This document shows, in pieces, positions 2,201 to 52,779 of a stretch of DNA of 64,000 nt. A model generated the notes under the pieces. That model was not told the origin of the DNA. It made no database searches and saw only the letters and a program-made list of their open reading frames with translations. Origin of the DNA: Pristiophorus japonicus (Eukaryota); contig NC_091993.1 of the NCBI RefSeq assembly GCF_044704955.1, positions 117,428,001 through 117,492,000 on the forward strand. The letters run 5' to 3'. A program made the position numbers and the translations under genes. Positions within the stretch are counted from its first letter, which is position 1, and each line of letters begins with the position of its first letter.

Positions 2201-2524
2201 TTTCAGGTGCATTGTGGGCAAGTAATCTAGTAAGAGGAATTGTGGGAAGAGCGATCACCATAGAATGTCACTATGGCCAATCGTACTGGTCATTTGAGAA
2301 ATATTGGTGTCAGGGCTGGACTCCAATATGCTCAGTTGTAGTAACAACAAATGATCAACATGGATGGGGAGGAAGAGTGTCAATCACAGATAACCAGAGA
2401 GCAGGAATATTTGTTGTTACGATGAAGGACCTTCGCTCAGCAGATGCAGGATGGTACAGTTGTGGTATTACAGAATCAGGCGGCTTCGATACACGTTTCA
2501 ATATAGAGCTACAAATATCTCACG
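2201..2524 (+). CDS. Receptor copy A, V-set Ig exon (CD300/CMRF35/pIgR/TREM-like; MDIR-like)
   Basis: Acceptor gtctcctcAG at 2199-2200, donor CACG|gtacat at 2525, 324 nt, phase 1-1. Protein has ITIECHY...KYWCQGWTPIC...RVSITD...FVVTMKDLRSADAGWYSCG, i.e. the canonical B/F Cys pair plus the KYWC-x6-C second disulphide typical of CD300/pIgR V domains. Confidence 0.93.
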
Positions 2525-3149
2525 GTACATTTCTCAGCGATGTGCTTTATTACTCTCTACTGAACTGTCTGATCAATGTTGTATCTGGGAGGAAACATGA
2601 GAGCTCCGATATCCCGAGGCTCCGCAGCAGTGCAGAGTCTCACAGGTAGTGGGCAGAGGTGGGGAAATCCGACTCACGGTGCACACTCCCAATCCGTGGC
2701 CTGCCCAACTTCCCGATCAGGAATTTCAAGTATTATGGGACTAACAATTCCTTTAACTACAGGGTGTTGTGCCAGACATCACATGGGAGGCTCACCACAT
2801 GTCCCTGTCTCTGAGCTGTTTTAAATGTCCCACTGTCAGAGGTTTGCCTTCAGACTGAAACTAATAGTCAGACAATAACAAAAGCAGTGAGCAGCAAGTC
2901 GTTACTAATGGTATCAATTCCTTGACATTAATAAAAATACCTGCAATCCACAGAGTTTAACAGGTTTCCTGTTTTCCTGATATGATGGGTGGCTCACATT
3001 ATCAATGAGATATTTGGTCAACTTTACAAACAATATAAAATAAAATTGAAAAGCTGGTCACTGTTTTGATTGTAAAAGAAGCCTCTTTATTAAATGTTGA
3101 GACATTATCTTCCTCCCCAGCATAACCTCCTGATGGATCAACTATTAGA

Positions 3150-5452
3150 TGCAATGGTCCGGATATTAACTTCGAGACATGTTCGGTACAGGGGATCCAG
3201 TATCGCGTAGGAAATCCGGAAGTAATTTCAGTCTGTCTGTGGCATTTTAACGCAGCCGGCCCATTATAATTTACTCCCGGGTTTGGCGTTGCATGCGCGG
3301 TAATGGGAGTGCTGCGGGCACGCATGATGCGATCTTAACTGAAGTATTTAAAGGACCAATGCAAAGATGGAATTCTAGGAGTTGGGCGGTTGGGAACAGA
3401 GACGGCAATTGTAGAAGATAGACTCAGGACGCTCAAAGCCCGCGCCCCACTTTAACAACGACTCCCTTGACGTACTAAAGGGGGCAGTGAGGAGTCGGGG
3501 AGAGATACTCTTCCCCAGAACCGAGAGGAAGAAACCTACAAAGGAGCCATGCCTGGATGTGACTGAAGATGTCAGCAGCAGGAGCATTATACCACACTCC
3601 TGGAGTCAGCACAGGTAGCTCTTTAATCACCTAACCCGGTTAGGAAAGGTGAGTATAGCTGCTCCTTCTACCTGTTGTGCATATCACCCATCCCCTCAGC
3701 CTGTCTTTTCAAGTCTACTCCATCATATCACTCCCCACACCCACTTACCTTGCGTGCACACCCATCCTTCTCTTTCTAAGCACTTCCTCACATCCCCGTC
3801 TCTCCATCACCACTGCCACTCGCCCGAATCCTTATACAATTTCATACCTCTCACTGATCATCACCCTCATCACATGCACTGCATCCATCAGGTGAACACA
3901 TGCCAATACCGTCACTCAAAGGTCTGTTATTCCTTCCCAGGGTGCACCATCACAGGACTCATGCTTACCATGCACCAATGCAGATACTCACACTTCGGTG
4001 GGTCCAGTTAGACAGATAGTTGTGTTTTTACCTGGAGACTCACACTTCACAAGTGAGCAAGAACAGAGAGTGGTGGCAGGGACTGCATCGGAGGGTACAG
4101 CACTCTCCAAACCATGTTCAGCTGGACACAGGTTCTGTACCCCGGGGGCTGTTGATGAAAAGGATAATCATTGAGGGGCAGCAGATAAGGCCTCCCACGC
4201 ACACTGTCTACAATTGCAGAGGAGTCTACCTCAAGCATGAGTGGGTTGATGTCACAGGACATTGCGAGGATGTCTTCTTCCATGGATAGAATGGCCAACT
4301 CTGGAACATCAGTCGTGACAATCAAATGAGTCCATGCAAGCCTTGACCACAGCCATAGATATCTGGCACCTTAAATAGGATGGCAGACACCTTAGCCTTG
4401 TCCTTACAGCACATCACTGATCTGCTCAACAGCAGAGAGGTAGGAGTGAAGTGCGATTGGGCCTTCAGAGGGATGATGGTGAAAGGCGATATGGAAGTGG
4501 GGACTCCAATCAAAGTGCTCCCACTTCTCCACCACTGTCCCACCCCACCCCTCAGTCAGTACCCGACATGCTGCCTCCTCTCCCAATGGCTGAGTCTGCC
4601 ACTGCACAGGTGCAGGTGAAGCAGTCTTTGGCAGGGCCCTCGTGGGCTCCAAACAGAGGACGGCGACCACTCAGCAGTCAGAGCAGAGAGCTGAGCAGCC
4701 TATCTTTACCTCTGCGTAAGTCATAAATATTGCACCACATAGGAGCGTTAAGAAAAGTGTAAAGTTTTGTAGTTGCACAAGCCTATGCACATGTGTGTTT
4801 GAGAAATTGCTATGCTGTTAAGTAATGGTCCTTGAGCAGAACCACATAAAATATTTAACTTTGCACCACTTTAACTTGTTGCCCCTTATTGGCTGCTGGA
4901 TTGCAACTGGTCTTTTCAGTTGCTCGTTAATGAATGGGAAGACGTGAATTGATGGGGAGATGAGCAATGGTGGTTGGTGGGTAGCAGGTCTGCTTTGTGT
5001 CAGTGGGATTGGTGCAGGGGTGGGGGCGTTGGGTGGGGTGGAGGTGGGGGTGGGGAGTTGGGAACAGCCATTGGATGTGGTTGTTACATCAGCCCAGTGG
5101 TGGTAACTGACTGAACCTTACAGCTATAAAGGAAACACTGGCATCGCGGGCAGCAATTTGAGTGACTGGTGCTGCGTTAGGGTCGCAATCTCTTCCTCCT
5201 CTTCCTGCTCCTTTTCCTCTTATCTTCCTCCTCCTTTTCCTCTTATCTTCCTCCTCTGTCTCGGAATGGTCCGCAGACAACGTGTGCTCAGCTCCTTGTT
5301 CCTCCTGCAGCTCCAATCTCGCTGCTGCGCAGTGTTGTGCAGAGCGCAGTAAACCACCATCATTCTGTAGGCCCAGGCTGGTGAGCACTGAAGGGCGCCT
5401 CCAGATCTGTCCAGGCAACTTGAGGGTGATGTCAGGAAACACTTCTTCCCAC
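3150..5452. mobile_element. Degenerate PIF/Harbinger transposon (Myb/SANT-like gene on +, 3' end of transposase on -)
   Basis: The + strand 3425-3648 reads RAPHFNNDSLDVLKGAVRSRGEILFP...VSSRSIIPHSWSQHR*LFNHLTRLGK followed by a gtgagt donor. The - strand 5100-5450 reads CLDRSGGALQCSP...VYCALHN plus an acidic tail, a HARBI-like C-terminus. Boundaries approximate. Confidence 0.7.
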
Positions 5453-5454
5453 AA

Positions 5455-5672
5455 AGGGTAGTGGAACTATCGAAATCTCTACCCCAGAAATCTGTTGATG
5501 CTGGGGGTCAATTGAAAATTGCAAAACTGTCATTGGCCAATTTGCTTAGGCAAAGGTACTCAGGGTTATGGAACCAAGGCCGGTAGATGGAGATAAGATA
5601 TAGATCAGCCAAGATTTAATTGAATGGCGGATCAGGCCCAAGGGGCTGAAACGCTTACGCCTTTTTCTATGT
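5455..5672 (+). mobile_element. CR1 LINE 3'-end fragment
   Basis: TTCCCACAAAGGGTAGTGGAA...GATCAGCC...GAATGGCGG...TTTCTATGTTC matches the 3' ends of the other CR1 copies in the window. Confidence 0.7.
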
Positions 5673-6124
5673 TCAGGACCTCCTGTTTATTTTTCAATGA
5701 ATCTGAGTGTGCGAATAGAAAAGTAATTAAACCCACAAAACATGTAACAGATATCTGCCAGTTTTTTGCCGTTGTATTCTGCTGTAGTTTTCAATCTCTC
5801 TATAACTAGTCCACATTCAAGAGTTAAACAATGAAATAACATTGGAGGCTGGCTACCTGCTACTGAGAGAAATTGTTAGCCCTGATTTTCACATTGACGC
5901 ATCCTCAGTATCATTGCTGCTGTCCCGATCTGGAGCCCTGCTATGTTCTGATATAATGGCAGACACGGTAGTTCAGTCTGCTGGGAGAATGGAGAGACAT
6001 GGAGAGGGAGATGTGAGATTCCAACATGGCAGGCCCTGGCTGAGATGCAGAAGTGCTGAAAATTGGAGAGTGTTTGATTTTTAAATGTTTAGTCAATATC
6101 TGAATGTTTGTTTCTTTCCCACAG

Positions 6125-6448
6125 AATCCGTGTCAGTTCCTGTACTTAGATATTTATCGCCACCAAATGTCTCATGTTCTGGGGGCTCAGTGTCAGCCTC
6201 CTGTGAGTCTGTCCAGGGATCCCTTCCCATTCAGTACACATGGTATGAACAGACCCCGATTAAAGGTTCAAAGATCTCCGACACCAATAAACTGGATCTA
6301 CATTGTCAATCCTTCAAACAGCAACATCATCAATATTACTGCACAGCCTCAAATAATCAGGGAGAGAAATCCAGTGAAATGGTCGATGTGTCAGTCTTCA
6401 ACAGAGCAGGGAAGCACTGCAGTTATGTGACACAAATCAGTGGCATTG
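6125..6448 (+). CDS. Receptor copy A, second Ig exon (C2/I-set, FCRL-like)
   Basis: Acceptor tttctttcccacAG, donor ATTG|gtaagt, 324 nt, phase 1-1. Protein ESVSVPVL...SASCESVQGSLPIQYTWY...YYCTASNNQG..SEMVDVSV. Confidence 0.92.
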
Positions 6449-6467
6449 GTAAGTGTTACTTTAAACA

Positions 6468-8810
6468 AACATAGAAACATAGAAAATAGGTGCAGGAGTA
6501 GGCCATTCGGCCTTTCGAGCCTGCACCGCCATTCAATGAGTTCATGGCTGAACATGCAACTTCAGTACCCCATTCCTGCTTTCTCGCCATACCCCTTGAT
6601 CCCCCTAGTAGTAAGGACCACATCTAACTCCTTTTTGAATATATTTGGTGAATTGGCCTCAACAACTTTCTGTGGTAGAGAATTCCACAGGTTCAACACT
6701 CTCTGGAGGAAGAAGTTTCTCCTCATCTCTGTCCTAAATGACTTACCCCTTATCCTTAGACTGTGACCCCTGGTTCAGGACTTCCCCAACATTGGGAACA
6801 TTCTTCCTTCATCTAACCTGCCTAAATCCGTCAGAATTTTAAACGTTTCTATGAAATCCCCTCTCATTCTTCTGAACGTCAGTGAATACAAGCCCAGTTG
6901 ATCCAGTCTTTCTTGATATGTCAGTCCCGCCATCCCGGGAATCAGTTTGGTGAACCTTTGCTGCACTCCCTCAATAGCAAGAATGTCCTTCCTCAAGTTA
7001 GGAGACCAAAACTGTACACACTACTCCAGGTGTGGCCTCACCAAGGCCCTGTACAACTGTAGTAACACCTCCCTGCCCCTGTACTCAAATCCCCTCGCTA
7101 TGAAGGCCCACATGCCATTTGCTTTCTTAACCGCATGCTGCACCTGCATGCCAACCTTCAATAACTGATGTACCATGACACCCAGGTCTCATTGCACCTC
7201 CCGTTTTCCTAATCTGTCACCATTCAGATAATAGTCTGTCTCTCTGTTTTTACCACCAAAGTAGATAACCTCACATTTATCCACATTATACTTCATCTGC
7301 CATGCATTTGCCCACTCACCTAACCCATCCAAATCACTCTGCAGCCTCATAGCATCCTCCTCGCAGCTCACACTGCCACCCAACTTAGTGTCATCCGCAA
7401 ATTTGGAGATACTACATTTAATCCCCTCGTCTAAATCATTAATGTACAATGTACACAGCTGGGGCCCCAGCACAGAACCTTGCGGTACCCCACTAGTCAC
7501 TGCCTGCCATTCTGAAAAGTAACCATTTACTCCTACTCTTTGCTTTCTGTCTGCCACCAGTTCTCAATTCACATCAGCACACTACCCCCAATCCCATGTG
7601 CTTTAACTTTGCACATTAATCTCTTGTGTGGGACCTGGTCGAAAGCCTTCTGAAAGTCCAAATACATCACATCAACTGGTTCTTCCTTGTCCACTCTACT
7701 GGAAACATCCTCAAAAAATTCCAGAAGATTTATCAAGCATGATTTCCCTTTCACAAATCCATGCTGACTTGGACGTATCATGTCACCTCTTTCCAAATGC
7801 GCAGCTATGACATCCTTAATAATTGATTCCATCATTTTACCCACTACTGATGTCAGGCTGACTGGTCTATAATTCCCTGCTTTCTCTCTCCCTCCTTTTT
7901 TAAAAAGTGGGGTTACATTGGCTACCCTCCACTCCATAGGAACTGATCCAGAGTCAATGGAATGTTGGAAAATGACTGTCAATACATCGGCTATTTCCAA
8001 GGCCATCTCCTTAAGTACTCTGGGATGCAGACCATCAGGCCCTGGGGATTTATCGGCCTTCAATCCCATCAATTTCCCCAACACAATTTCCCGACTAATA
8101 AGGATTTCCCTCAGTTCCTCCTTCTTACTAGACCCTCTGACCCCTTTTATATCCGGAAGATTGTTTGTGCCCTCCTTAGTGAATACCGAACCAAAGTACT
8201 TGTTCAATTAGTCTGCCATTTCTTTGTTCCCCGTTATGACTTCCCCTGATTCTGACTGCAGGGGACCTATGTTTGTCTTTGCTAACCTTTTTCTCTTTAC
8301 ATATCTATAGAAGCTTTTGCAGTACGTTTTAATGTTCCCTGCACGCTTCCTCTCGTACTCTATTTTCCCTGCCCTAATCAAACCCTTTGTCCTCCTCTGC
8401 TGAGTTCTAAATTTCTCCCAGTCCCTGGGTTCGTTGCTATTTCTGGCCAATTTGTATGCCACTTCCTTGGCTTTAATACTATCCCTGATTTCCCTTAATA
8501 GCCACGGTTGAGCCACCTTCCCTTTTTTATTTTTACGCCAGACAGGGATGTACAATTGTTGTAGTTCATCCATGCGGTCTCTAAATGTCTGCCATTGCCC
8601 ATCCACCGTCAACCCCTTAAGTATCATTCGCCAATCTATCCTAGCCAATTCACGCCTCATACCTTCAAAGTTACCCTTCTTTAAGTTCTGGATCATGGTC
8701 TCTGAATTAACTGTTTCATTCTCCATCCTAATGCAGAATTCCACCATATTATGGTCACTCTTCCCCAAGGGGAACGAGATTGCTAATTAATCCTCTCTCA
8801 TTACACAATA
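6468..8810 (-). mobile_element. 5'-truncated CR1 (HER1-like) LINE, ORF2 RT region, disrupted
   Basis: KSPGPDG, YRPVSLTS, YLDFQKAFD, GVPQGSVLGP and KFADDTK motifs; (AGAAACAT)n tail starts ~20 nt after the exon donor. Confidence 0.95.
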
Positions 8811-9034
8811 TGGTTAATGAATTTTTTAAATGAGTATCGATCCAAACTGGTCACTGGTTAAATGCCTTCAGTCACTGAGCGACTTCAAGTGGCCAAATTC
8901 AATCCATTTGGATCGCTCAATAGTTAAAAACAGAATTATTCAGTCACCATAACACCATGTCCCTGGTTCTGAATTAAGGAGGACTTAAGTTAATTTAAAT
9001 GTATTGGTTTAATTTTTCGCAGAGTGGGCACATG

Positions 9035-9775
9035 AAAACTTAAGAAATAGGAGTAGGAGTAGGCCATATGGCCCCTCGAGCCTGCTCCGCCATTCAATAA
9101 GATCATGGACTCAGGTCCACTTCCCTGCCCACTCCCCATGACCCCTTATCCCCTTATCATTAAAGAAACTGTCTATTTCTGTCTTAAATTTATTCAATTT
9201 CCCAGCTTCCACAGCTATCTGAGGCAGCGAATTCCACAGATTTACAACCCTCAAAGAAGAAATTTCTCCTCATCTCTGTTTTAAATGGGCGGCCTCTTAT
9301 TCTAAGATCATGCCCTCTAGTTCTAGTCTCCCCCATCAGTGGAAACATCCTCTCTGCATCCACCTTGTCAAGCCCCCTCATAATCTTATATGTTTCGATA
9401 AGATCACCTCTCTTTCTTTTGAATTCCAGTGAGTAGAGGCCCAACCTACTCAACCTTTCCTCATAAGTCAACCCCCTCATCCCCGAAATCAACCTCGTGA
9501 ACCTTCTCTGAACTGCATCCAAAATAAGTATATCCTTTTCGTAAATATGGAAACCAAAACTGCACGCAGTATTCCAGGTGTGGCCTTACCAATACCTTGT
9601 ATAGCTGTAACAAGACATCCCTACTTTTATACACCATCCCCTTTGCAATAAAGGCCAAGATACCATTGGCTTTCCTGATCACTTGCTGTACCTGCATACT
9701 AACCGTTTGTGTTTCATGCACAAGTACCCCCAGGTCCTGCTGTACTGCTGCACTTTGCAATCTTTCTCCATTTCG
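9035..9775 (-). mobile_element. CR1 LINE 3' fragment (second subfamily)
   Basis: ORFs 9190-9760 give VRPHLEYCVQFW and RRFTRLI...RGDLIETYK, followed by the CR1 3' hairpin and tail. Confidence 0.9.
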
Positions 9776-9939
9776 GAGGATAGAAGCAATATGTTCGCAA
9801 TATGTTCACCAGTGGCTGCGCTGAGAAACATCAAAATGGTCAGAAAACAAAGAGAAATGCATTTCCTCCTAAGCAGCAATAAATATAAATGAACATATGC
9901 AAATATTGACTCTGGCCATATGCTCGTGGATTCACTTGC

Positions 9940-12900
9940 AGAGATAATGTTTCAGGTCGATGACCCTTTGTCAGAACTGGAAAAGATTAAAGATCTAACA
10001 GGTATTTGAGCAAGTATAGGGGCAGTGAAAGGGGGAGGGGAGGAAAGAACAAAAGGTAAGGTCTGTGATAGGGTGGAAGGCAGGAGAGATTAAGAAAGAA
10101 AAGGGATGATGGTGCAATGCAAAAGGAGTTGGCAATGAGCATTCTGTGGGGAGAGGGTGAACAGCCAGAGGCCATGGTCCATATCGGTACCAATGACAGG
10201 TAGAAAGAAGGATGAAGTCATGCAGGCAGATTTCAGAGAGCAAGCAGAGAGGTTAAAAAGCAGGACCCCAAAGATAGTAATCGGCGGATTACTACCGGTG
10301 CCACGTGCTAGTGAGTAAAGAAATCGGAGGATAGAGCAGATGATTGCGTGGCTGGAGAGATGGTGCACCAGGGAGGGCTTTAGGTTCCTGATCCATTGGG
10401 ACCGTTTCCGGGGGAGGTGGGACCTGTACACCTCAATAGAACCGGGACCAATATCCTCGCGGGGGGGAGCGGGCGGTGGTATATTGCCAGTGCTGTTGGG
10501 AAGGAGTTAATCTAGATTGGCGGGGGATGGGAAGCTGGGAATAAATTCAGAAGGAAGAGAAGCAAAGCTGGAATTGGAAAGCAGAAAAGTAGAAAGTTAA
10601 TTTGGAAGGCAGAGGAAACAATGGCTAGAAAATAGACAACAAGGGAGTTTGGTAGTGCTAAATGGTATATATTTCAATGCAAGGAGTCTGGGGAATAAGG
10701 CAGATGAGCTGAGAGCACAGATAGACACTTGGGAGTAGGATGTTATAGCTATTTCTGAGACATGGCTGAAAGAAGCGAAGGTATGGCAGCTCAACATTCC
10801 TAGTTACAGGGTTTTCAGATGGGATAGAGAGGGGGATAAAGAGGATGGGGGCGTGGCAGTATTGATTAAAGAAACAATTACACCTGTGAGGAACGATGAT
10901 ATGTTAGCAGGATTATCAAATGAGGCTATGTGGGTTAAATTGAACAACAAAAAAGTGGCGCTCACACTGCTGGGAGTGTACTATTGACCCACAGTCAGAG
11001 GATGATCGAAGAGCAAACATGCAGGCAGATTTCTGAGTATTGCAAAAACTATAGGGCTGCAATAGTAGGGGATTTCAACTGCCCTAATATTAACTGGGAT
11101 AACATTAGTGTGAAAGTTATACAGGGTGCGGAATTCCTAAAATGCATTCAGGGGACCTTTTTTAGCCAGTATGTAGCAAGCCCAACAAGGGAGGGGGCGG
11201 TTTTGGACTTAGTTTTAGGGAATGAAGCCTGCAGATAGAAGGTGTATCAATGGAAGAGTATTTTGGTGCTAGTGATCATAATTCAGATAGATTTAGGGTA
11301 GTTATGGAAAAGGACAAGATAGACCAGGAATAAAAGTGCTCAATTGGGGAAAAGCCAATTTTGTTATGTTGAGATGGTATTTAGCCAAAGTAGACTGGGA
11401 ACAGCTATTTGAAGGTAAATCAGTGTCAGAGCAGTGGGAGACATTCAAGGAGGAGATCCTGAATGTTCAGAGCAAGTATGTTCCCTTCAAGAAAAAAGGT
11501 GGGACTAATCTGGAGCCTCCTGGGTGTCATGGGGCATACAGGGTAGGAGAAAGGAAAAAAAGGGAGGCATGTGACAGATACCAAGGACTCAAAACTTCAG
11601 AAACTCTAGAGAAGTATAGTAAGTGCAGGGGTGAAATTAAAAAGGAAATTAGGAAAGCAAAGAGAGAGAATGAAAACATTTTGGCAAGTAAATTCAAGGA
11701 AAACCCAAATATTTTTCATAAATACATTAACAGCAAGAGGATAACTAAAGAAAAAGTAGGGCCCATTAGAAACAAAAAGGTAATCTGTGTGTGGAGTCAG
11801 ATGTGTGTAGGGTTCTTAATGAATACTTTGCATCTGTTTTCACAAAAGAAAGAGGTGATGCAGACATTGCAATGAGGGAGAAGGAACATGAAATATTGGA
11901 TGAAATAAACATAGAGAGAGAGGAAGTATTAAGGGGTTTAGCAGCTTTGAAAGTGGATAAGTCCCCAGGCCCGGATGAAATGTGTGCCAGGCTGTTGAGA
12001 AGCAAAAGAGGAAATAGCAGAGGCTTTGACCATCATTTTCCAAACCTCTCTGGCAACAGGTGTGGTGCCTGATGACTGGAGGACTGCTAATGTTGTACCT
12101 CTGTTTAAAAAAAGGAGAAAGGGATAGACTGAGTAATTACAGGCCAGTCAGCTGAACCTCCGTGGTGGCAAAATTATTGGAAAAAATGGTGTGGGACAGG
12201 ATAAATCTTCATTTAGAAACACACAGATTAATCAAGGACAGGCAGCATGGATGTTTTAAGGGAAGGTCGTGTCTGACTAACTTGATTGCATTTTTTGAGG
12301 AGGTAACAAGGAGGTTCGATGAGGGTAGCACGTTTGATGTAGTGTCTATGGATTTTAGCAAGGCTTTTGATAAGTTCCCACATGGCAGACTGGTTACAAA
12401 ATTAAAAGCCCATGGGACCAAGGCAAAGTGGCAAGTTGGATCCAAAATTGGCACAGAGGCAGGAAGCAAAGGGTAATGGTTGGTGGGTGGTTTTGTGACT
12501 GGAAGGCTGTTTCCAGTGGATTTCCACAGGGCTCAGTACTAGGTCCCTTGCTTTTTGTAGTATATATCAATGATTTAGACTTGAATGTAGAGTGTATGAT
12601 TAAGAAGTTTGCAGATGATACAAAAATTGGCTGTGGGGTTGATAATGAAGAAAGCTGTAGACTGCAGGAAGATATCATTGAACTGGTGGACAGAACAGTG
12701 ACAAATGGAATTCAATCCGGAGAAGTGTGAGGCAATGCATTTCGGGAGGAGTAACAAGACAAGAGAATACACATTAAATGGTGGGACACTGAGAAGTGTA
12801 GAGGAACAAAGGGACCTTGGAGTGCAGGTCCACAGGTTCCTGAAAGTAGCAAGTTCGATAGATAAGGTGCGAAGAAGCCATTCGGAATACTTGCCTTCAT

Positions 12901-13745
12901 TAGCCGAGGCATAGAATACAAGAGTAGGGAGGTTATGCTTGAACTGTATAAAACACTAGTTAGGCCACAGCTAGAGTACTACGTGCAGTTCTGGTCACCA
13001 CATTACAGGAAAGATGTGATTGCACTGGACAGGGTACAGAAGAGATTTACGAGGATGTTGCCTGGACTGGAGAATTTTAGCTATGAGGAAAGATTGGATA
13101 GGCTGGGATTGTTTTCTTTGAGGATGAGAGGAGATCTTATTGAGGTGTATAAAATTATGACGGACCTACATAAAGTGGATAGGAAGGACCTATGTCCCTT
13201 AGCAGAGGGGTCACCAACCAGGGGGCATAGATTTAAAGTAATTGGTAGGACGTTTAGAGGGGAAATGTTTTCACACAGGATAGTGGGGGTTTGGAACTCA
13301 CTGCCTGAAAGGGTGGGAGAGGCAGAAACCCTCACCACATTTAAAAGATACTTGGGCGTATACTTCGAGCGCCGTAACCTACAGAGCCATGGACCGCAAG
13401 CTGGAAAATGGGATTAGGCTGGATAGTGGGATTAGGCTGGATAACTAGTTGTGGGCCAAAATGGCCTCCTCCTGTGCTGTAAATTTCTATGATTCTATTC
13501 TATGAATGGGTCAAGTTAAGAAACAAAAGATGAGTCTAGATAGGGTGTAAATGGAGATGGCAGAATCATCAACAGCTGCTGTGAGAAAGAGAAAAAACAT
13601 TAAAAAATAAAAAAATAGAGGCAGTTATTATAGTTTGAAATTGTTGAACTCGATGTTGAGTTCAGAAGGGTGTAAAGTGCCTAAACGAAATATGAGGTGC
13701 TATTCCTCGAGCTTGCCTTGAGATTCATTAGAACAGTGCAAGGGG
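9940..13745 (-). mobile_element. Penelope-like element relic, split into ~9940-10137 and ~13505-13745 by a CR1 insertion
   Basis: The - strand 13635-13720 translates KLEE*HLIFRLGTLHPSELNIEFNNF, the C-terminal GIY-YIG-region motif of fish/shark Penelope elements. Confidence 0.6.
10138..13503 (+). mobile_element. Degenerate CR1 LINE (3' part of ORF1 esterase + ORF2 EN/RT)
   Basis: HIGTND esterase motif, FNARSL/SETWL and GDFN endonuclease motifs, KFADDTK, and TTCTATGATTCTATTCTAT tail; many stops and frameshifts. Confidence 0.9.
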
Positions 13746-14018
13746 CCCTTTAACTGCCACAACAGTAACTCTGTACCACCAACTCTCAGATATGGAAAAG
13801 AAACGGAAATTATCGGTAAAAATGGGTCACAGCCCAGTGTCAGCAGCCTCTCCTTGCTACCGGAGAAGGGGAAATTACACAGAAATTTAATCATCCAAAA
13901 CCATTATATCAACCAGGCTTTTACATAAGTAACAAGGTTCCATTTGACAATCGTGCTCTCTTGGTTGACTACAAATGAAAATTAGGTGAATCTAAATATT
14001 ATTTTGTTGTTTCAATAG

Positions 14019-14139
14019 GACTTGAATATTCTTGTGAAGTTTTTTCAACTGTATCACCAACAACTGCACATTCGACAAGTACAAATGTTATTTCCACTGA
14101 TAATCAAAAACAATCTTCAGGATCCAAATCCACTAAAAG
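14019..14139 (+). CDS. Receptor copy A, Ser/Thr-rich stalk exon
   Basis: Acceptor ttttgttgtttcaatAG, donor AAAG|gtacaa, 121 nt, phase 1-2. Open frame GLEYSCEVFSTVSPTTAHSTSTNVISTDNQKQSSGSKSTK joins the C2 and TM exons in frame. Confidence 0.82.
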
Positions 14140-14639
14140 GTACAATGTTCTCATTGTTGATGTTTTGACTGGCATTGCCTCCATCTGAGAGATTAAATAT
14201 TCTTTAATAGTTTTGGCATAAGGGTTGATAATCATTTATTATTTTGGAATGTTGCTCATCAGAATGGAAATGGTGGCTGGGTTTACATCATGCTGATGTG
14301 TTAGCTTCCTAATGAAAGTGCTGCCTTTGTTGGTAGGAAATAAGCACCTCCATTTTGCTGCCCCTCAGATGGTGCTCTTTGCATTATTCACTATGATTAC
14401 TTCACCACTAACCTACTCTCATGGTTTGTGATGAGTTGCACTTATCAAACTTACCTTGCCGATATCTGTTCTGGTGTGGGGCTGACAGTAAAGTTTCTGT
14501 TGGTGAAAGTGAGCAATAGCAGCAATATATCTGCACCGCCCTTGATATCACCAGTGAGCAACATCTTACAGCTTTGGTCCAATTCTCAGTGTCGCTCACT
14601 ACAACTGCAGGAAGTTTCTTCTCTTAAAATGTATTATTG

Positions 14640-15677: not shown

Positions 15678-15768
15678 TTACATTACATGGAACGTGGGAC
15701 GCTGGCTGCTCTTTGCTCTCCTGGTGATTTGTACTATTTCAGTCACAAGGTGTACGAGAAAATCTAAG
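15678..15768 (+). CDS. Receptor copy A, transmembrane exon with NxxR motif
   Basis: Acceptor tcttcccttttgctcAG, donor AAG|gtaggg, 91 nt, phase 2-0. Protein (S)YITWNVGRWLLFALLVICTISVTRCTRKSK: hydrophobic helix followed by basic stop-transfer residues. Confidence 0.88.
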
Positions 15769-27558: not shown

Positions 27559-27564
27559 AGAACA

Positions 27565-39675: not shown

Positions 39676-39744
39676 CTACTTCATCTGTCAATCTAATTTA
39701 CATACCCAGCACTCTGTGGGAAGAGGCGGTGATTGAATTTTCCT

Positions 39745-40041: not shown

Positions 40042-40157
40042 CTAACTACTTTCTCATTTAAATTCCTCCTATCATGTATGTTAGATTTATTTCGATGTGA
40101 GAGCTAAGAGCTGGGTGACTGGCGACAAGTGCTGACCTGAACTTTGCAAAGAAAACG

Positions 40158-40194
40158 ATGTGGATTCTGATTCTTCTCATGTGTTCCCGGCCCG
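40158..40194 (+). CDS. Receptor copy B, signal-peptide (leader) exon
   Basis: ACGATG start, MWILILLMCSRP, donor G|gtgagt, phase 1. Joins the V exon to give MWILILLMCSRPVSGA|LWANK. Confidence 0.85.
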
Positions 40195-41339
40195 GTGAGT
40201 GACATTCAGAGCGGGATATTCAGATAATCAGTGTTAGTTTGAGTCTAGTGTACGGTTCATGCAGCAGCGATGTTTAAATACTTGTAGACATGTAAAGGCA
40301 CAAGATACTCAGCAAAAATATACAATGTATAATATTTGTGTGAAGTCTTGTAATCTCTTTTTGACTGCACTATATTGTACCACACACATATTTACCAATA
40401 TATACTAAACTGCATTATTTATTGTGAATGGAAAATAAAGGGTGCATTTAATTTTTTTTAAAGCTACACGAGTAACATAATCAAGATGCAAAGGACACCC
40501 ATTTTAATCTGTAAAAAGTGATTTTTACTGTAGTCTGATGTCCAATATACACTGAAGACTGCAGTGGTAATAATCCCTCACACAGAACATGTCTGGAGCT
40601 TGCAATTGTTTCTGTTATTTAAAGTACAGCTGATGAAGTATTGCTTTATGAGGCTCTGTCAGTGACACTGTTTCTCACTGCTAGAGGCTGGGTCTATATT
40701 AAGCAACCATTTCCTTCTCACTCTTTAACTCGAAACAAGTAAATTTAGCTTTTTCACTCCCGCCCCATATTAACCTAACGGTATTATGCTATAATGGAAG
40801 ATTGGATTAATACTGCCACCTCTCCTCCATTTATGACGAATCTTTATTCCCAGCAATGCTGAACTCCCAGTCTCACCCTACCCTAAGCCACGACAGTTAA
40901 TTCTATTGCATCAAACCTCCCCATGAAGATGTGTGCCTCCAGCTAACCAATTTTACGCAGAATACTTTATGAACTTCTGTACATGCAACTGACGCGAGCC
41001 TCTGTCTGTTTGGCATCTTCCTCTTTTCAGTCCTTCCTCCTTCTGATCTGATCTCATTTACCTCCCCGATTCCACCTTTTATCTTTCCTATCTCCTTTTC
41101 CCTATCAACTCTTCTCTCTGCCTCTTCACATTTTTAACCTCCCTCCGCCATTTTAGTGTAAACTCTTTTCCCACAGCACGAGCTGCTCTCCCAGCAAGGC
41201 CATTGGTCTAATAACTGTTCAACTAAAGTCCCCCCGTCCTTAACAGGCCGCTCCTCTTCCAGAACTGGCCCCAATGTGCCAGGAATCTGAACCCTTTTCT
41301 TCCAAACCATCTCTCTAGACAAAGAATCATGTCCTTTAT

Positions 41340-47300: not shown

Positions 47301-50300
47301 TGCCACTTTGTCCAGACGATGTAGGGCTTCTTCAAGATTGTTCAGATGTTCAGCAGTGTCGCAACCCATGACCAGAATGTCATCTTGAAACACGACGGTT
47401 CTAGGAATGGACTTCAGTAGACTCTCCATGTTCCTCTGAAATATGGTTGCAGCCGAACGGATTGCAAAAGGACACCTGTTTTAGACAACAAGTCCTTCAT
47501 GGGTGTTGATGCAGATGATGCAGTTTCTTTGAAGTGTCGACAAGCTCCTGCGTCATATAGGCCGGCATCAGATCCAGTTTCGTGAATGACTTTCCACCAG
47601 CTAGCGTGGCGAACAGGTCATCAGCCTTTGGTAGCGGATACTGATCCTGTTTCGGAAATTTGTTAATCGTAACCTTGTAGTCTCCACAGATCCTGACAGT
47701 GCCATCACTCTTTAACACAGGAACAATAGGATTGGCCCATTCGTTAAATTCGACCTGCGATATGACCCCTTCATGTTGGAGTCTGTTAAGCTCAATTTCG
47801 ACCTTCCCCCTCATCATGTACAGAACAGACTGAGCTTTATGATAGACAGGTCTTGCATCAGAATCCAGGTGAATCTGCACCTTGGCTCCAGTAAAATTGC
47901 CAATGCCCTGTTCAAACAAAGAAGGAAACCTCTTCAGCACTTGAGCACACCAAGTGTCATCCACACTTTGATATCATTCCAGTTCCACTTGATTTTCTCG
48001 AGCCAAATTCTGCCGAACAGCGTTGGACCATTGTCTGGGACGATCCATAATGGTAAGTCGTGAACCACACCATCATACGACACCTTGACTATGCACTGCA
48101 TATGAGTTCCTTAGTGCAGGTACGCAACTTGGCATTGACTGGACTCAGCTTAGGCTTCACAGCCTCGGTGCCCCACAGCTTGTCGAATGTTCTTTGGCTC
48201 ATTATCGACTGACTCGCACCCATGTCCAGCTCCATTGCTACAGGCACGCCATTAGCTTAACATTAACGATTATCGGCTGGCTCTTTCCCAAGGATGAAAA
48301 CAGACCATACACCTCCTCCTCGGCTTGTGTATCCGAACCAGCACTGGACTGGTCATCATCAGCAATGTGATTAGCGGCACCACGTCTGCTTAGTTCTCTG
48401 AAGATGCCCCATTTTTGAACAGCCTTTCCAGATGTACTGTTTAAACTGACACTGATGAGGCCGATGATTGCCCCCACAACGCCAACAGGGTGAAATCGGA
48501 TTCGTACCAGTTGGCTGACTTTGAGCAGCTACAGGTTTCACATAAGCAGTCGAATAGGCCCTGCCATAAGCAGCTCTGTCAGACGACGACACAATCTTGT
48601 TTACAGTACTTGCCGTGGAGCTCCAACTCTTCAATGATATCTGCCTTAAATTATCATCAGTTGCCATTCATGCCTGGGCAGTCGTGATGGCCTTGCTCAA
48701 ATCCAGCGTTTCTGCAGCCAATATTTTCCGAAGGATCACACCATGGTTGATGCCTATCACAAAGAAATCTCACAGCTTGTTTTCCAACGCGTTTCCGAAT
48801 TTACACGCCTCAGCGAGACGTCTTAGATTGGCGACGAATCCCGACACATCCAGACCCTCATCACGAACATGTGGGTAGAAGCGATAGCGTGAGATGATGA
48901 TCCCCTCTTTTGGCTTTAGATGTTCACACACCAGAGCGCACAAATCCCCATACTCTTTGTCCGTTGGACGTGCAGGCGAGAAGATTCTTTGAGGTCATAA
49001 ATTTTTGGACCACAAACGGTGAGGAAAACCGCCCTGCGCCTAACTGCGTCACCAGCTTCCTCCATTTTGTTGGCCACGAAATACTGATCCAGGCAGTCGA
49101 TAGAATCCGCCTAATCCTCACCATCCACGAATCTCTCCAGAATTCCAATGGTACCCATTGTGCATGCGAAGATTCTTAAATTATCTCGTCGCCAAATGTA
49201 ATGTATATAATGACTCAAAAGAGTTGTTACTGTAAACTCACTCAGATGCAAACTTGGTTCAACTTTATTCGCGCCCAAAGTGCCACATGACATGGTAATC
49301 ACTCTTATACACCAGGGCTTGCGCATATGCGCATACAGCCCGATGACCTCCGACAGTAGCGCCCCCTGGTACCTGGTGACATAACACTCCCCCCCCCCCC
49401 CCCCACCCCCATCTCACTCTCTCTCCTCTTCCCCATCTCGCTCTCTCTCCTCCATTGCTCTCTCCCTCACACACTCATCTCTCTCTCGCCCTCCCGCTCT
49501 CTCTTCCCCACCCCACATCTCTTTGTCTCTGGCCCCCGTGTCTCTCTCTCTCACCCCTTCTCCTCTCTCTTTCCCCCCCCCCTCGCCCCGTGTCTCTCTC
49601 TCTCTCCTCCCCACATCTCGCTCTCTGTCCTCCATCTCTCTCTCTCCCTCCCATCCTGATCTCTCTCTCGCCCCTCTCTCTCTCCCTACCTCTCTCTCTC
49701 CAACCCCGCCCCCCATCTCTCTGTCTCTGGCCCCCATATCTTTCTTTTGCCTCTTCTCCTCTCTCCCTCTCCCCCCCCCCAGCCCCCGTCTCTCTCTCAC
49801 CCCGGCTCTCCCTTCCCCCCCCCCCATCCCCGTCTCCCCCCCCTAGCGTCTCTCTCTCTCTCTCTTCCCCCTCCCCATCTCTCTTTTCCCCCCTCCCGTC
49901 TCCATCTCCTTCCCACCCCCATCTCGCTCTCTCTCCTCAGTCTCTCCCTCACTCTCCCCCCCTCATCTCTCTCTCTCCCAACTGTCTCTGCCTCCCATCT
50001 CTCTCTCACCCTTCTCCTCTCACTTTCCCCCCCCCCCCACCCCCATGTCTCTCTCTCTCTCTCTCTGTCCCTAGTCTCTCTCTTCCATCCACTCATATCT
50101 TTCTCGCTGCCCCGCAACCTCTCTCCCCTCCACTCATTTCTCTCTCCGCCCCCTCTCCTTTCTCTCTTCCCCCACCTGCCCCCGTCTCTCTCTCTCTCTC
50201 TCTTCCCCCTCTCATCTCCCTCTCTATTCCCTCCCTTGCTCTCCCCCCTCTACTCTCTCTCTCCCACCTTCTCCCATCTGTCTCTCTCTCTCCCCGCCAG

Positions 50301-52090
50301 TCTCCACCACCGCCCCCCCCAGTCTCTCTCTCTCCCCAATGTCTCTCTCTCTCTCTCTCCCCTCCCGTCTCTCACTCTCTCCCACCCTCCCATCTCTCTC
50401 TCCACACCTCTCTCTCTTCCCCCTCCTCTAACATTGTCCCCTGTCTCTCCCTCTTCTCCTCTCTTTCAGTCCCCCTCTCCCTCCGTCTCTCTCTCTCTCT
50501 TCCCCCCCAGTCTCTCTCTTCCCCCCATCTCTCTCTCTTCCCCCATCTCTCCCCCCTCCGTCTCTCTTAGTTCCACCCATTCCCGCACCAAACCCCCCCC
50601 CCCCACCGGCTCTCTCTCCCTCCCTCTTCCCCCAGTATCTCTCTTTCCCCTGCCTCCCTCTATCCCCTGCCCCTCTCCCTCATCCCTCTCTCACCCCATC
50701 TCATCTCTCTCTCCCCTCCTCCACCCCCCATCTCTCTCCCCCTCTACCCCCATCTTCCCCCCACCACCCCCGTATCGCTCTCCCACCCCCATCTTTCTTT
50801 CCCTGCTCCTCCTGTCTCTCCCTCTCTGCTCCATCCTGTCTCTCTCTCTCTCCCCCTTCCACCCCGCCCAATCCTCTTCCTCCCCCCCGACTCTCTCTCT
50901 CTCTCTCTCTCCACCCGCCATGCCCCACGCTCCCCGCCCCGGTCTCGCTCTCTCTCCCCCTTGTCTCTCTCTCTCCCTCTTTCCCCCGTGTCTCTCTCTC
51001 TCTCTCTCCCCCCACATCCCTGTCTCCCTACTCCCCGACCCCGGTGTTTCTCTCTTCCTCCCCCATGTCTCTCTCACTCTCCCCCCATGTCACTCTCTCT
51101 GCCCCTCATCTCTCTCTCTTTCTCTCTCCACCAGTCTCTCTCCTTCTCTCTCCCCCAGTATCCCTCTCTCCCCCCGCCCCTCTGCCTCACTCTCCCTCCC
51201 ACCTCTGTCTCTCTCTCTCGCTCCGACCCCTGTCTCATTCTCTCCCTCCCCTCCCGTCACTCTCTCCCTCCCCTCCCCTCCTGTTATTCTCTCCCTCCAC
51301 CCCCACCACCGTTCTTTCTGTTCCTCCCCCACATTTCTCACTCCCCCATGTCGCTCTCTCTTTCCCCCCCCAGTCTCTCTCTCCCCCAGTCTGTCTCTCC
51401 TCCACCCTCCGTCTCACTCTCCCTCCCACCCGTCTCTCTCTCCCCCCCCGCCCCCGTCTCTCATTCTCCCCCCCCACCATCTCTCTCTCCCCCCTTTCAT
51501 CTCTCTCTCCCCACCTCGCAACTCTCGCTCCCTTCTCCTCTCTCTCCTCCCTTCTCCTCTCTTTCCCCCCAGTCTCTCTCTCTCTCTCTCCCCCAGTCTC
51601 TCTCTCTCTCCCCAGTCTCTCTCTCTCTCTCTCCCTCTCTACCCCAGTCTCTCTCTCTCTCTCCTCCCAGTCTCTCCCTCTCTCCCCCCGTCTCTCTCTC
51701 TCCCCCCGTCTCTCTCTCTCTCCCCCCGTCTCTCTCTCTCTCCCCCCAGTCGCTCTCTCTCTCTCCCCTCAATCTCTCGATCTCTCCCCTCAGTCTCGCG
51801 ATCTCTCCCCCCAGTCTCTCTCTCTCTCCCCCAGTCTCTCTCTCTCTCTCCCTCCCCCTAGTTTATTTCGCCCCCCTCCCCAGCTACCCCCCCCCCACCA
51901 ATCCTGTCTGTCTCTCTCTCTCTCTCCCCGTCTCACTCTCTTCCCTCCGCCGCCCCCACCCGCCACTGTCTCTCTCTCTCTCTCATTGTCTTTCTCCCCC
52001 TCCTCTGTCTCCCCGTCTCTCTCTCTTACCACCCCAGTCTCTCTCTCTCTTGCTCGCCCCCCAGTATCCCTCTCTCTCTCTCCCACTCCG
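41340..52090. repeat. ~6.3-kb polypyrimidine tract in intron 1 of copy B (41340-44966 and 49387-52090), split by the Gypsy element
   Basis: Almost pure C/T on the + strand; also contains a short CR1 3' end at ~43460-43557. Confidence 0.95.
44967..49386 (-). mobile_element. Full-length, decayed Gypsy/Ty3 LTR retrotransposon
   Basis: LTRs 44967-45171 and 49197-49386 (TG...CA), 5-bp TSD CTCCC, PBS TGGCGACGAG on - next to the 5' LTR, purine tract next to the 3' LTR. Gag knuckle CWRCGGNHRPHQC, protease LDMGAS, RT FQDD, RNase H and integrase (HVWWP..CNTC, HIDFA, DNG, SNGRAER) in Gypsy order. Confidence 0.95.
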
Positions 52091-52455
52091 ACAATGTTTT
52101 CTCTCACACCGAAGGCCGCAAAAATATTCCAAATAATGCAAAAGCGGGAAGCAAATCCAGCTCCAGGCTCCAGCGGCAGAAAATGTTTCAGCAGTGATGA
52201 GCTCCACCGGGCTCATGGTTTGGCTCCCAGTGACTGTATTCAAAAATAAATCATTGGCTGTGAAGCGCTTTGGCACATCCTGAGCATGTGATCAGACACT
52301 ATATTAACGTTTTCTTCCATCACAAACTAGAAGGAATTCACCTGTATCAATAGATGTAGTGGAGATGTAGTACAGAGTGGTAACTCTTATTCAATCGTAA
52401 CTGTTTGTATTAAGCAGTTATTTCCTGTTCAATTTCTGAAATATTGTCTCCTCAG

Positions 52456-52779
52456 TTTCAGGTGCATTGTGGGCAAATAAACGAGTAAGAGGAATTGTGG
52501 GAAGAGCGATCACCATAGAATGTCACTATGACCAAAGGTACCGGTCACATGTGAAATATTGGTGTCAGGGCTGGACTCACCAATGCTCAGTTGTAGTAAC
52601 AACAAATGATCAACATGGATGGGGAAGAAGAGTGTCAATCACAGATAACCAGACAGCAGGAATATTTGTTGTTACGATGAAGGACCTTCGCTCAGCAGAT
52701 GCAGGATGGTACAGTTGTGGTATTACAGAATCAGGCAGCTTCGATAAACGTTTCAATATAGAGCTACAAATATCTCACG
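52456..52779 (+). CDS. Receptor copy B, V-set Ig exon (CD300/pIgR-like)
   Basis: Same splice sites as copy A (donor gtacgt), 324 nt, open. Protein ITIECHYDQRYRSHVKYWCQGWTHQC...DAGWYSCG. Confidence 0.93.

What the first reader, a model, noticed from the sequence alone, without database searches (positions are those of the whole stretch)
2201..52779. Paralogous V exons differ at 14 codons, all non-synonymous, inside a ~99% identical duplication
Hand alignment of 2201-2524 with 52456-52779 gives 18 substitutions in 14 codons and no silent codon change: S>N, N>K, L>R, G>D, S>R, W>R, F>H, E>V, P>H, I>Q, G>R, R>T, G>S, T>K. The equally long C2 exon has only 2 differences (1 silent). Changes cluster at the N-terminus, the BC/CDR1-like loop (GQSYWSFE>DQRYRSHV), the CC' loop inside the extra disulphide (TPI>THQ) and the FG/CDR3-like loop (GGFDT>GSFDK). 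All Cys and the core Trp are kept. Inference: strong diversifying selection or gene conversion on the ligand-binding face, as in KIR/CD300/NITR-type innate receptor families.
Basis: partly seen in the sequence, partly recalled or inferred. Interest (0 to 1): 0.8.

Follow-up and report, generated by a model that had tools for sequence, protein, structure and literature searches.

The report
Shark immune-receptor twins differing in binding loops
Two neighbouring, almost identical copies of a shark CD300-like immune-receptor gene differ mainly by 14 amino-acid changes in the loops of the domain that probably binds ligand, the usual mark of selection for new binding specificities in such gene families.

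Summary
V exons 2201-2524 and 52456-52779 differ at 18 bases in 14 codons, all amino-acid-changing. The equally long C2 exons differ at 2 bases, one of them silent.

The excess is real:
- Replacement divergence is 7.0%, against 1.3% in the adjoining 2 kb of intron (p about 1e-6) and 0.14% over the next 9 kb.
- The exon's transition:transversion ratio is 6:12, against 23:4 in the intron.
- 12 of the 14 sites lie in loops of a confident model whose closest solved fold is mouse CD300lf. That receptor binds its ligands between the CC' and CDR3 loops.
- The 14 sites are also the variable positions in 28 shark and ray homologues.

The genes belong to a known elasmobranch family. It has a CD300/pIgR-type V domain, a C2 domain and a stalk, followed by either an arginine-bearing transmembrane segment or an ITIM tail. 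Public annotation calls its members "CMRF35-like"; the literature calls comparable skate genes MDIR. They appear to come from the Japanese sawshark.

Most changes are on copy A, which carries residues seen in no homologue and has lost five positive charges. Contigs from other animals show the copy-B exon, mosaic variants and a single-step codon intermediate, but never copy A's CDR1.

Adaptive replacement shuffled by recombination is the best reading. Patchwise conversion or allelic status is not excluded. This is a new member of a known kind. Other windows of this scan had already noted the family.

The parts
2201..2524 (+). V exon of gene A (CD300/pIgR-type V-set domain, phase 1-1). It is the divergent copy: acidic and aromatic, with CDR1 GQSYWSFE, CC' loop TPI and FG loop GGFDT.
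   Evidence: Acceptor AG at 2199-2200 and donor GT at 2525-2526. Pfam V-set 4.5e-11. AF2 model pLDDT 92. Best fold match is CD300lf, TM 0.89 and 40% identity.
52456..52779 (+). V exon of gene B. It is close to the family consensus and basic: CDR1 DQRYRSHV, CC' loop THQ, FG loop GSFDK, plus the unusual G57R.
   Evidence: Pfam V-set 1.1e-11. An RNA-like contig of run X6 (12 other letters and 2 gaps over 2245-2523) matches this copy and stops at the exon end.
6125..6448 (+). C2 exon of gene A.
   Evidence: Acceptor AG at 6123-6124 and donor GT at 6449-6450. Pfam Ig_3/Ig_2. RNA-like contigs of X5 and X6 start at 6124, and X5 joins this exon to the V exon.
56380..56703 (+). C2 exon of gene B. It differs from A at 56671 (H>R) and 56696 (silent).
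   Evidence: It is 95% identical to the C2 part of the sawshark protein P0011.
14019..14139 (+). Ser/Thr-rich stalk exon of gene A.
   Evidence: tblastn hits from P0016, P0017, P0020 and P0030. Acceptor AG at 14017-14018 and donor GT at 14140-14141; phases fit the C2 and TM exons.
15678..15768 (+). Transmembrane exon of gene A, with an arginine in the membrane span (activating type).
   Evidence: tblastn: 58-68% identity to the transmembrane segments of P0006, P0012, P0020, P0023, P0024, P0028 and P0038. Splice sites seen.
40158..40194 (+). Leader (signal peptide) exon of gene B: ATG, 12 codons, then G|GTGAGT.
   Evidence: Pattern scan gave this as the only hit in the window. 78% identity over 23 aa, upstream flank included, to the N-terminus of white-shark P0030.
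1134..13737 (.). First copy of the duplicated block. The partner is 51394-64000, cut by the window end.
   Evidence: Self-BLAST. Difference profile.
51394..64000 (.). Second copy of the duplicated block.
2525..4729 (+). Part of intron 2 with 1.3% A/B divergence (the older block). Beyond about 4730 the divergence drops to 0.14%.
6467..8808 (-). LINE fragment inserted 18 nt after the C2 donor in both copies. Its AAACATAG tail repeat occurs twice in A and three times in B.
   Evidence: Reverse-transcriptase ORFs. Repeat copies. Tail repeat. Repeat-level depth and loose ends at 6467.

Best explanation
A and B are neighbouring members of a tandem array of activating V-C2 immune-receptor genes in a shark, apparently the Japanese sawshark. 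The family is CD300/pIgR-like and is probably the one described as MDIR in skate.

Most of each roughly 50-kb unit is kept nearly identical, either because the duplication is recent or because the copies are homogenised. The V exon has instead accumulated amino-acid replacements about five times faster than the neighbouring intron accumulates any change. These replacements sit almost entirely in the BC (CDR1), CC', DE and FG (CDR3) loops.

By analogy with CD300lf, the CC' and FG loops wall the ligand pocket and CDR1 flanks it. The changes therefore most likely retune ligand specificity.

Most derived states lie on copy A. Its loops became hydrophobic and aromatic and lost five net positive charges relative to the basic, consensus-like copy B.

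Recombination or gene conversion among copies and alleles shuffles these variants. Selection for new or diverse binding surfaces explains why only replacement changes are seen.

Shown here: the differences, their excess, their location in loops, family membership, splicing, and expression of B-like transcripts. Inferred: the binding role of the loops, selection as the cause, and the paralogous (not allelic) status of A and B.
For: - **Excess of replacements.** There are 18 substitutions in 14 codons and none is silent. pN is 0.070, against an intron divergence of 0.013 (p=9.5e-7) and 0.0014 further 3'.
- **Different substitution spectrum.** The exon's Ts:Tv is 6:12 and the intron's is 23:4 (p=0.001), so this is not just a faster ordinary mutation rate.
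- **Location.** 12 of 14 sites are in loops of a pLDDT-92 model (p=0.002).
- **Closest fold.** The best match is CD300lf, at 40% identity and TM 0.89. There the CC' and CDR3 loops form the phosphocholine and norovirus pocket over the C-C' disulphide (PMC6166816). A four-residue allelic CC' polymorphism in mouse switches that receptor's function (PMC7431780).
- **Family variability.** The 14 sites have a mean entropy of 2.02 bits across 28 homologues, against 1.02 bits at other sites (p=2.9e-5).
- **Polarity.** B shares its state with sawshark P0011 at 8 of 11 comparable sites. It also matches a third sawshark transcript at 7 nucleotide positions. A's S27, W29, F31, E32, P41, I42 and R66 occur in none of the 28 homologues.
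- **Charge.** V_A is -1.3 and V_B is +3.9 at pH 7.
- **Stepwise change.** At site 27 the codons form a single-step chain: TCG (A), TGG (a DNA contig of another animal), AGG (B).
- **Recent paralogue pairs elsewhere.** V identity is below C2 identity in Hemiscyllium (0.74 vs 0.94), both Chiloscyllium species and Pristis. Sawshark P0011 against B gives 83% in V and 95% in C2.
- **Gene integrity.** The leader, V, C2, stalk and TM exons have consistent splice phases. RNA-like contigs break at the exon borders.
Against: - Only two sequences are compared. The within-exon dN-versus-dS test is modest (p=0.01-0.06).
- Five adjacent-base changes, including four in a row at 2324-2327, together with the mosaic variants in other animals, fit patchwise conversion as well as repeated point mutation.
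- Copy A's CDR1 letters (2287T, 2293T, 2294T, 2297A) appear in none of the four runs laid, so that exon form is unconfirmed outside the assembly and its expression is not shown.
- G57R in B hits a position that is G in all 28 homologues compared, which hints at some relaxation.
- Among old ray paralogues the C2 domain is the more divergent one, so faster V evolution is not a general rule in the family.
- No ligand is known.
Confidence: 0.6

Rival explanations
1. Patchwise gene conversion is the main cause. Short tracts copied from other V-C2 paralogues of the large cluster replaced CDR1, the CC' loop and other patches in one copy. The excess would then reflect imported, already-diverged sequence rather than new mutations in place. 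Selection would still be needed somewhere in the family to explain replacement-only differences.
For: - The changes are clustered: 3 in 7 nt, 7 in 22 nt and 4 in 4 nt, with five adjacent pairs (P=0.001).
- States are shared in mosaic fashion with P0011 and with a third transcript (TPQ against TPI and THQ).
- A 545-nt contig of another animal mixes A-type and B-type letters: 2399C, 2529G and 2717C alongside 2482G, 2492C, 2538C, 2549A and 2809C.
- Divergence falls sharply from 1.3% to 0.14% near 4.7 kb, which shows block-wise exchange between units.
- Earlier scan notes place at least six V-C2 genes nearby as possible donors (unchecked).
- Gene conversion is documented between primate CD300A and CD300C (PMC12447643).
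Against: - No donor carrying A's W29, F31, E32, P41 or I42 was found in 28 homologues, in P0011 or in any contig laid.
- Tracts taken from diverged paralogues should also carry silent differences, and none is seen.
- The TCG-TGG-AGG chain at site 27 looks like stepwise point change.
Confidence: 0.25
2. A and B are two alleles (haplotypes) of one locus that the assembler placed in tandem. The differences would then be allelic polymorphism of a single, highly polymorphic receptor gene. It would still be selected, but it would not be paralogous.
For: - Divergence over 9 kb is 0.14%, a level I judge (from general knowledge, not checked here) compatible with heterozygosity.
- Another animal's contigs carry further V-exon variants at this place, so the exon is polymorphic or varies in copy number.
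- The duplicated block is cut by the window end, so its full extent cannot be seen.
Against: - There are no Ns in the window, and 36 kb of unrelated sequence separates the copies.
- Gene B has its own leader exon at 40158, inside that spacer.
- Earlier notes place the 25.4-27.6 kb feature again at +50264, and a third V-C2 pair 49.6 kb beyond B. Three units cannot be two haplotypes (unchecked leads).
- In DNA run X1 the V-exon contigs have depths of 22.9 and 10.2 against about 36 for the shared intron. This fits three copies better than two alleles, but only weakly.
Confidence: 0.1
3. One copy is decaying under relaxed constraint, or the differences are consensus errors.
For: - G57R in B falls at a position that is G in all 28 homologues compared.
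- Copy A's exon form is unseen in other runs, and no transcript of it was found.
Against: - Neutral decay cannot exceed the intron rate, yet replacement divergence is 5.5 times that rate.
- There are no stops, no frameshifts and no silent changes. All Cys, W35 and the other conserved framework residues are kept.
- The B-type letters are seen in independent DNA and RNA-like runs.
- Sequencing errors would not be confined to replacement positions of loop codons.
Confidence: 0.05

Closest known systems
CD300 / CMRF35-like family, especially mouse CD300lf (CLM-1)
   Same: - It is a V-set domain with the extra C-C' disulphide and the KYWC motif.
- It is the best sequence and fold match among single-domain receptors: E 7.5e-20, 40% identity, TM 0.89.
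- The family has both activating members (charged transmembrane segment) and inhibitory members (ITIM).
- Ligands bind between the CC' and CDR3 loops (PMC6166816).
- Allelic CC' loop variation changes function in mouse (PMC7431780).
- Gene conversion occurs between CD300 paralogues in primates (PMC12447643).
   Different: - To my knowledge mammalian CD300 has a single V domain on a stalk. The shark genes add an FCRL/PECAM-like C2 domain.
- No ligand is known for the shark proteins.
- No one-to-one orthology is implied.
MDIR (modular domain immune-type receptors) of the clearnose skate
   Same: It is a multigene family of cartilaginous fish with CD300/TREM/pIgR-like Ig domains and activating and inhibitory forms (PMC3031540, citing Cannon et al. 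2006). The homologues found here in skates, rays and sharks show the same mix, plus modular domain combinations such as V-V, V-C2 and C2-C2.
   Different: The skate MDIR sequences (ABC86796, ABC86797 and ABC86799, as listed in PMC3031540) could not be fetched, and the original paper is not held. Identity with MDIR classes is therefore not tested.
Polymeric immunoglobulin receptor (pIgR)
   Same: It gives the best summed sequence match, because each of its V domains matches, with the same C-C' disulphide. The model predicts a helical turn in CDR1; from memory, pIgR domain 1 has a similar turn.
   Different: pIgR has four to five (two in teleosts) tandem V domains, no C2 domain, and a long cytoplasmic tail (from my own knowledge, a sorting tail). 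The genes here have an Arg-bearing transmembrane segment and a short tail.
KIR, LILR, NITR and similar polygenic, polymorphic innate receptor arrays
   Same: The evolutionary mode is the same: tandem arrays, near-identical backbones, and replacement changes concentrated on the ligand-contacting part.
   Different: The domain types and lineages differ, so this is a resemblance in mode, not membership. Polymorphism and copy-number variation are only hinted at here.

Membership tests
CD300/pIgR/TREM-type V domain (CMRF35-like) | V-set immunoglobulin fold | tested here: met
   Pfam V-set 4.5e-11 and 1.1e-11. AF2 model with nine strands, pLDDT 92. Foldseek top hits are CD300lf, CD300a/c, pIgR D1, TREM2 and NKp44.
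CD300/pIgR/TREM-type V domain (CMRF35-like) | Second disulphide linking strands C and C' (Cys just after the core Trp, plus a Cys 7-8 residues later) | tested here: met
   C36 and C43 are present in both copies and invariant or nearly so in 30 sequences. CD300lf has Cys36-Cys44 at the floor of its ligand cleft (PMC6166816).
CD300 proper (mammalian architecture) | Single V domain directly on a stalk | tested here: not met
   A C2-type Ig exon follows the V exon and is spliced to it in RNA-like contigs. Homologues also carry V plus Ig_3/Ig_2.
MDIR (skate modular domain immune-type receptors) | Multigene family in cartilaginous fish with CD300/TREM/pIgR-like V domains, in activating, inhibitory and secreted forms | tested here: met
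   Homologues occur in 15 or more shark and ray species. Some have Arg-bearing transmembrane segments (P0006, P0012, P0020, P0023, P0024, P0028, P0038), some have ITIM tails (P0015, P0018, P0027, P0029, P0030, P0034), and some lack a transmembrane segment. Gene A's transmembrane exon is at 15678-15768.
MDIR (skate modular domain immune-type receptors) | Sequence relationship to the named skate MDIR1-5 genes | not tested
   The skate MDIR sequences are not retrievable with these tools, and the original paper PMC3701310 is not held. A little-skate homologue (P0005) was found at 61% identity.
Innate receptor arrays under diversifying selection (KIR/LILR/NITR mode) | Replacement rate above the neutral rate in the ligand-binding domain | tested here: met
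   pN is 0.070 against pS of 0.007 or less, and against an intron divergence of 0.013. This rests on one pair only.
Innate receptor arrays under diversifying selection (KIR/LILR/NITR mode) | Allelic polymorphism or copy-number variation between individuals | tested here: inconclusive
   Contigs of another animal carry mosaic and third-state V-exon variants and lack the A-type CDR1. However, contigs cannot separate alleles from paralogues.
Innate receptor arrays under diversifying selection (KIR/LILR/NITR mode) | Variable residues contact a defined ligand | not testable with these tools
   No ligand is known. The location is inferred from CD300lf (PMC6166816).

The most novel reading that the evidence does not exclude
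The sawshark V-C2 array may work as a germline-encoded, variable recognition repertoire. The unit backbones would be kept uniform by concerted evolution, while the V-exon loops escape homogenisation and are driven apart. Copy A would then be a recent switch of the CD300-type lipid pocket from a cationic to a hydrophobic, aromatic form, implying a new ligand class or escape from a pathogen that uses the pocket. This would place KIR/NITR-style receptor diversification, on a CD300-type pocket, in cartilaginous fish, an early-diverging lineage of jawed vertebrates.
Probability: 0.3. Interest if true: 0.55.

Novelty: new member of a known kind. Interest (0 to 1): 0.4.

Why it matters
Paired activating and inhibitory Ig receptors with fast-evolving binding surfaces are central to innate recognition in mammals (KIR, LILR, CD300) and teleosts (NITR, DICP). 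Their behaviour in cartilaginous fish is barely studied.

This locus offers a clean natural experiment. The two copies share the same backbone and differ essentially only in the loops that, in CD300lf, form the lipid and virus pocket.

Expressing the two ectodomains would test directly which residues set specificity in an ancient CD300-type pocket.

In kind, however, this is an expected feature of such families, and the genes belong to a family that public databases already annotate.

Tried and rejected
- **Other V or C2 exons in the window as conversion donors.** tblastn found only the two pairs.
- **Leader exon just upstream of V exon A.** None was found. That stretch holds a SINE-like element and a CT-rich array. 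Gene B's leader lies 12.3 kb upstream, at 40158, so gene A's leader should lie before the window start.
- **DNA of other sawshark paralogues.** Only one sawshark protein (P0011) is in the protein collection. Codeml, FUBAR and GENECONV therefore could not be run.
- **The MDIR paper and the Cannon review.** Neither is held.
- **A general rule that V evolves faster than C2.** Rejected. It holds for recent paralogue pairs but reverses in old ray paralogues.
- **Pseudogene decay and sequencing error.** Rejected on rate, frame and independent reads.
- **Somatic hypermutation as the source of the tandem base changes.** Considered, but a germline consensus assembly would not carry somatic variants.
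- **The Pfam Imm53 hit to V_B.** It scores 25.2 bits against a cut-off of 25 and was taken as chance.
- **The large representative search.** Not used, because the word search settled the family.
Full report
**1. Observation**

The two stretches are collinear at an offset of 50255 and have the same length. They differ at 18 bases in 14 codons of the phase-1 reading frame, and every codon change alters the amino acid.

The C2 exon (6125-6448, partner 56380-56703) is also 324 nt. It differs at 6416 (H>R) and 6441 (silent).

The duplicated block runs 1134-13737 versus 51394-64000 and is cut by the window end.

**2. Is it more than chance?**

Differences between the copies are very uneven:

| Stretch | Differences | Divergence |
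|---|---|---|
| V exon | 18 in 324 | 5.6% |
| Intron 2525-4600 | 27 in 2076 | 1.3% |
| 4601-13737 | 13 in about 9.1 kb | 0.14% |
| 300 nt before the exon | 3 in 300 | about 1% |

The statistical tests give:
- Exon against adjoining intron: Fisher p=7.6e-6.
- Replacement sites alone against intron: p=9.5e-7.
- No silent change among 14-18 events: P=0.03-0.01.
- Within-exon replacement against silent sites: p=0.013-0.06, which is modest.

The substitution spectrum also differs. The exon has 6 transitions and 12 transversions, and the intron has 23 and 4 (p=0.001). The exon is therefore not simply mutating faster in the usual way. Five of the changes are adjacent-base pairs (P=0.001), including four bases in a row at 2324-2327.

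Replacement divergence is about 5.5 times the local neutral proxy. That excludes relaxed constraint as the sole cause.

**3. What the genes are**

Both V exons are Pfam V-set. The best PDB sequence matches are pIgR domains, CD300f/CLM-1, CD300a/c, NKp44 and TREM2.

A word search found shark, ray and skate proteins annotated "CMRF35-like molecule", "polymeric immunoglobulin receptor-like" or "Fc receptor-like". Their layout is leader, V, C2, Ser/Thr stalk, and then one of three endings:
- an Arg-bearing transmembrane segment with a short tail,
- an ordinary transmembrane segment with an ITIM tail, or
- no transmembrane segment at all.

The one sawshark entry, P0011 (Pristiophorus japonicus), is 95% identical to the window's C2 but only 83% identical to V_B (74% to V_A). 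The window is therefore most likely from that species, and P0011 is another paralogue.

By homology and splice signals, gene A has these exons:
- V exon, 2201-2524
- C2 exon, 6125-6448
- stalk exon, 14019-14139
- transmembrane exon, 15678-15768, with an Arg in the span

Gene B has its own leader exon at 40158-40194. Its later exons lie beyond the window. Gene A's leader should lie before the window start.

The rest of the window is LINEs, a Gypsy-type element, a Harbinger-type element and CT-rich arrays.

The literature describes a comparable skate family as MDIR (PMC3031540, citing Cannon et al. 2006). Membership is therefore supported by description only, not by sequence.

**4. Where the changes sit**

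An AlphaFold2 model of V_A, built with 30 aligned sequences, has pLDDT 92 and pTM 0.84. Its strands are A 4-6, A' 9-13, B 18-24, C 33-37, C' 44-48, D 59-64, E 69-74, F 83-89 and G 97-106.

Twelve of the 14 sites are in loops (p=0.002):

| Location | Sites |
|---|---|
| BC / CDR1 | 25, 27, 29, 31, 32 |
| CC' loop, inside the extra disulphide | 41, 42 |
| Just before strand D | 57 |
| DE loop | 66 |
| FG / CDR3 | 94 |
| A/A' kink | 7, 8 |
| First residue of a strand | 9, 97 |

The closest solved fold is mouse CD300lf, at 40% identity and TM 0.89. In that receptor, phosphocholine and the murine norovirus capsid both bind a cleft between the CC' and CDR3 loops. The Cys36-Cys44 disulphide forms the floor of the cleft, and CDR1 lies nearby (PMC6166816). 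A four-residue allelic difference in the mouse CC' loop switches virus-receptor function (PMC7431780).

The residue-by-residue equivalence with CD300lf is approximate, because I could not print that alignment.

Across 28 homologues, the 14 sites are the variable ones: 2.02 bits of entropy against 1.02 (p=2.9e-5). The exception is site 57, which is G in all 28 homologues compared, while copy B has R.

**5. Polarity and chemistry**

Copy B carries the common family residue, or the P0011 residue, at most sites: K8, D25, H31, V32, H41, Q42 and T66. Copy A's S27, W29, F31, E32, P41, I42 and R66 occur in none of the 28 homologues.

A third sawshark transcript (run X5) agrees with B and not with A at 2287, 2293, 2294, 2297, 2326, 2327 and 2399.

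Most change is therefore on A's lineage. The net charge of the domain is -1.3 in A and +3.9 in B. A has lost basic and His residues and gained aromatic and hydrophobic ones around the presumed pocket.

**6. Reads**

Only Logan contigs of other samples were available.

- **Runs X5 and X6** cover exons only, and their contigs break at the exon borders, so they behave like RNA.
  - X6 holds a contig that matches copy B's V exon (12 other letters plus 2 gaps, as expected for B) and a C2 contig with no difference.
  - X5 holds a 1359-nt spliced V-to-C2 contig of a more distant paralogue. Its FG/G-strand stretch is 39 letters against 43 in the window, about one codon shorter by my count.
- **DNA runs X1 and X3**, from one other animal, show only B-like letters in CDR1. 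They also show:
  - a minor contig with A-type letters at 2226 and 2228 and TGG at site 27, which is the single-step intermediate between A's TCG and B's AGG;
  - a 545-nt contig that mixes A-type and B-type letters.

These results show three things. The B-type letters are real. The exon varies among copies or animals. Variants are recombined.

They do not confirm copy A's CDR1, which remains supported by the assembly alone.

**7. Paralogues or alleles?**

The following points favour true paralogues:
- The window contains no Ns.
- 36 kb of unrelated sequence separates the copies.
- Gene B has its own leader exon inside that spacer.
- Earlier scan notes place the window's 25.4-27.6 kb feature again at +50264, and a third V-C2 pair 49.6 kb beyond B. 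That would make a tandem array of three or more units. These notes are unchecked, and the sequence lies outside my reach.
- Other notes list further V-C2 genes upstream.

I therefore take A and B as paralogues, with about 10% left for haplotype mis-assembly.

**8. Mechanism**

The step from 1.3% to 0.14% divergence near 4.7 kb shows that parts of the unit have different histories, through block-wise homogenisation or exchange.

Within the older block, the V exon alone carries a five-fold excess, and it is made up of replacements only. The best reading is adaptive replacement at the binding loops. It falls mostly on copy A, and recombination or conversion moves the variants among copies (confidence 0.6).

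Pure patchwise conversion (0.25) explains the clustering and the mosaics. However, it lacks a donor and predicts silent differences that are not seen.

Among recent paralogue pairs in other sharks, V is again less conserved than C2. Among old ray paralogues the reverse holds. The effect is therefore one of young duplicates, not a constant property of the domain.

**9. Verdict**

The genes belong to a known, publicly annotated family, and the evolutionary pattern is the expected one for such receptors. I class it as a new member of a known kind, of moderate interest.

Other windows of this scan had already noted the family.

Noticed in passing
window 6449-6472 (and 56704-56735): Reading through the C2 exon donor gives GKCYFKQT followed by a stop. 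Very similar tails end annotated proteins of other sharks (P0007, P0013, P0025) and sawshark P0011. This suggests a conserved secreted V-C2 isoform made by intron retention.
   Followed up: partly
window 6467-8808 and 56730-59071 (minus strand): A LINE fragment sits 18 nt after the C2 donor in both copies, so the insertion predates the duplication. Its AAACATAG tail unit occurs twice in A and three times in B.
   Followed up: partly
window 2324-2327 vs 52579-52582: The four consecutive 'substitutions' CAAT>ACCA can equally be written as a compensating pair of 2-nt indels (+AC, -AT) six bases apart. A third transcript carries CCG CAA here, which is intermediate in protein (TPQ).
   Followed up: partly
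window 1-2000, 41200-45000, 49400-52200: There are long CT-rich, strongly strand-skewed low-complexity arrays (GC skew about -0.8). One lies between the leader and V exons of gene B, and one just upstream of each V exon. These arrays are the most divergent part of the duplication.
   Followed up: no
window 10347-10831: A second local cluster of A/B differences (7 in 485 nt) lies inside transposon-derived sequence, within the otherwise 0.14%-divergent block.
   Followed up: no
window 40125-40157: The 33 nt before the start codon of gene B's leader exon translate to a peptide that matches the annotated N-terminus of white-shark P0030. In the window an in-frame stop lies just upstream, so this looks like a conserved 5' UTR.
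   Followed up: partly
window 45207-48667 (minus strand) and 33485-34199 (minus strand): The long intron and spacer between the two gene copies hold Gypsy-type retroelement ORFs (protease, RT, integrase-like) and a Harbinger-type transposase ORF.
   Followed up: no
window 52458-52778: The Pfam model Imm53 (a bacterial immunity protein) scores 25.2 bits on V_B, just over its cut-off of 25. I take this as a chance match to an Ig domain.
   Followed up: no
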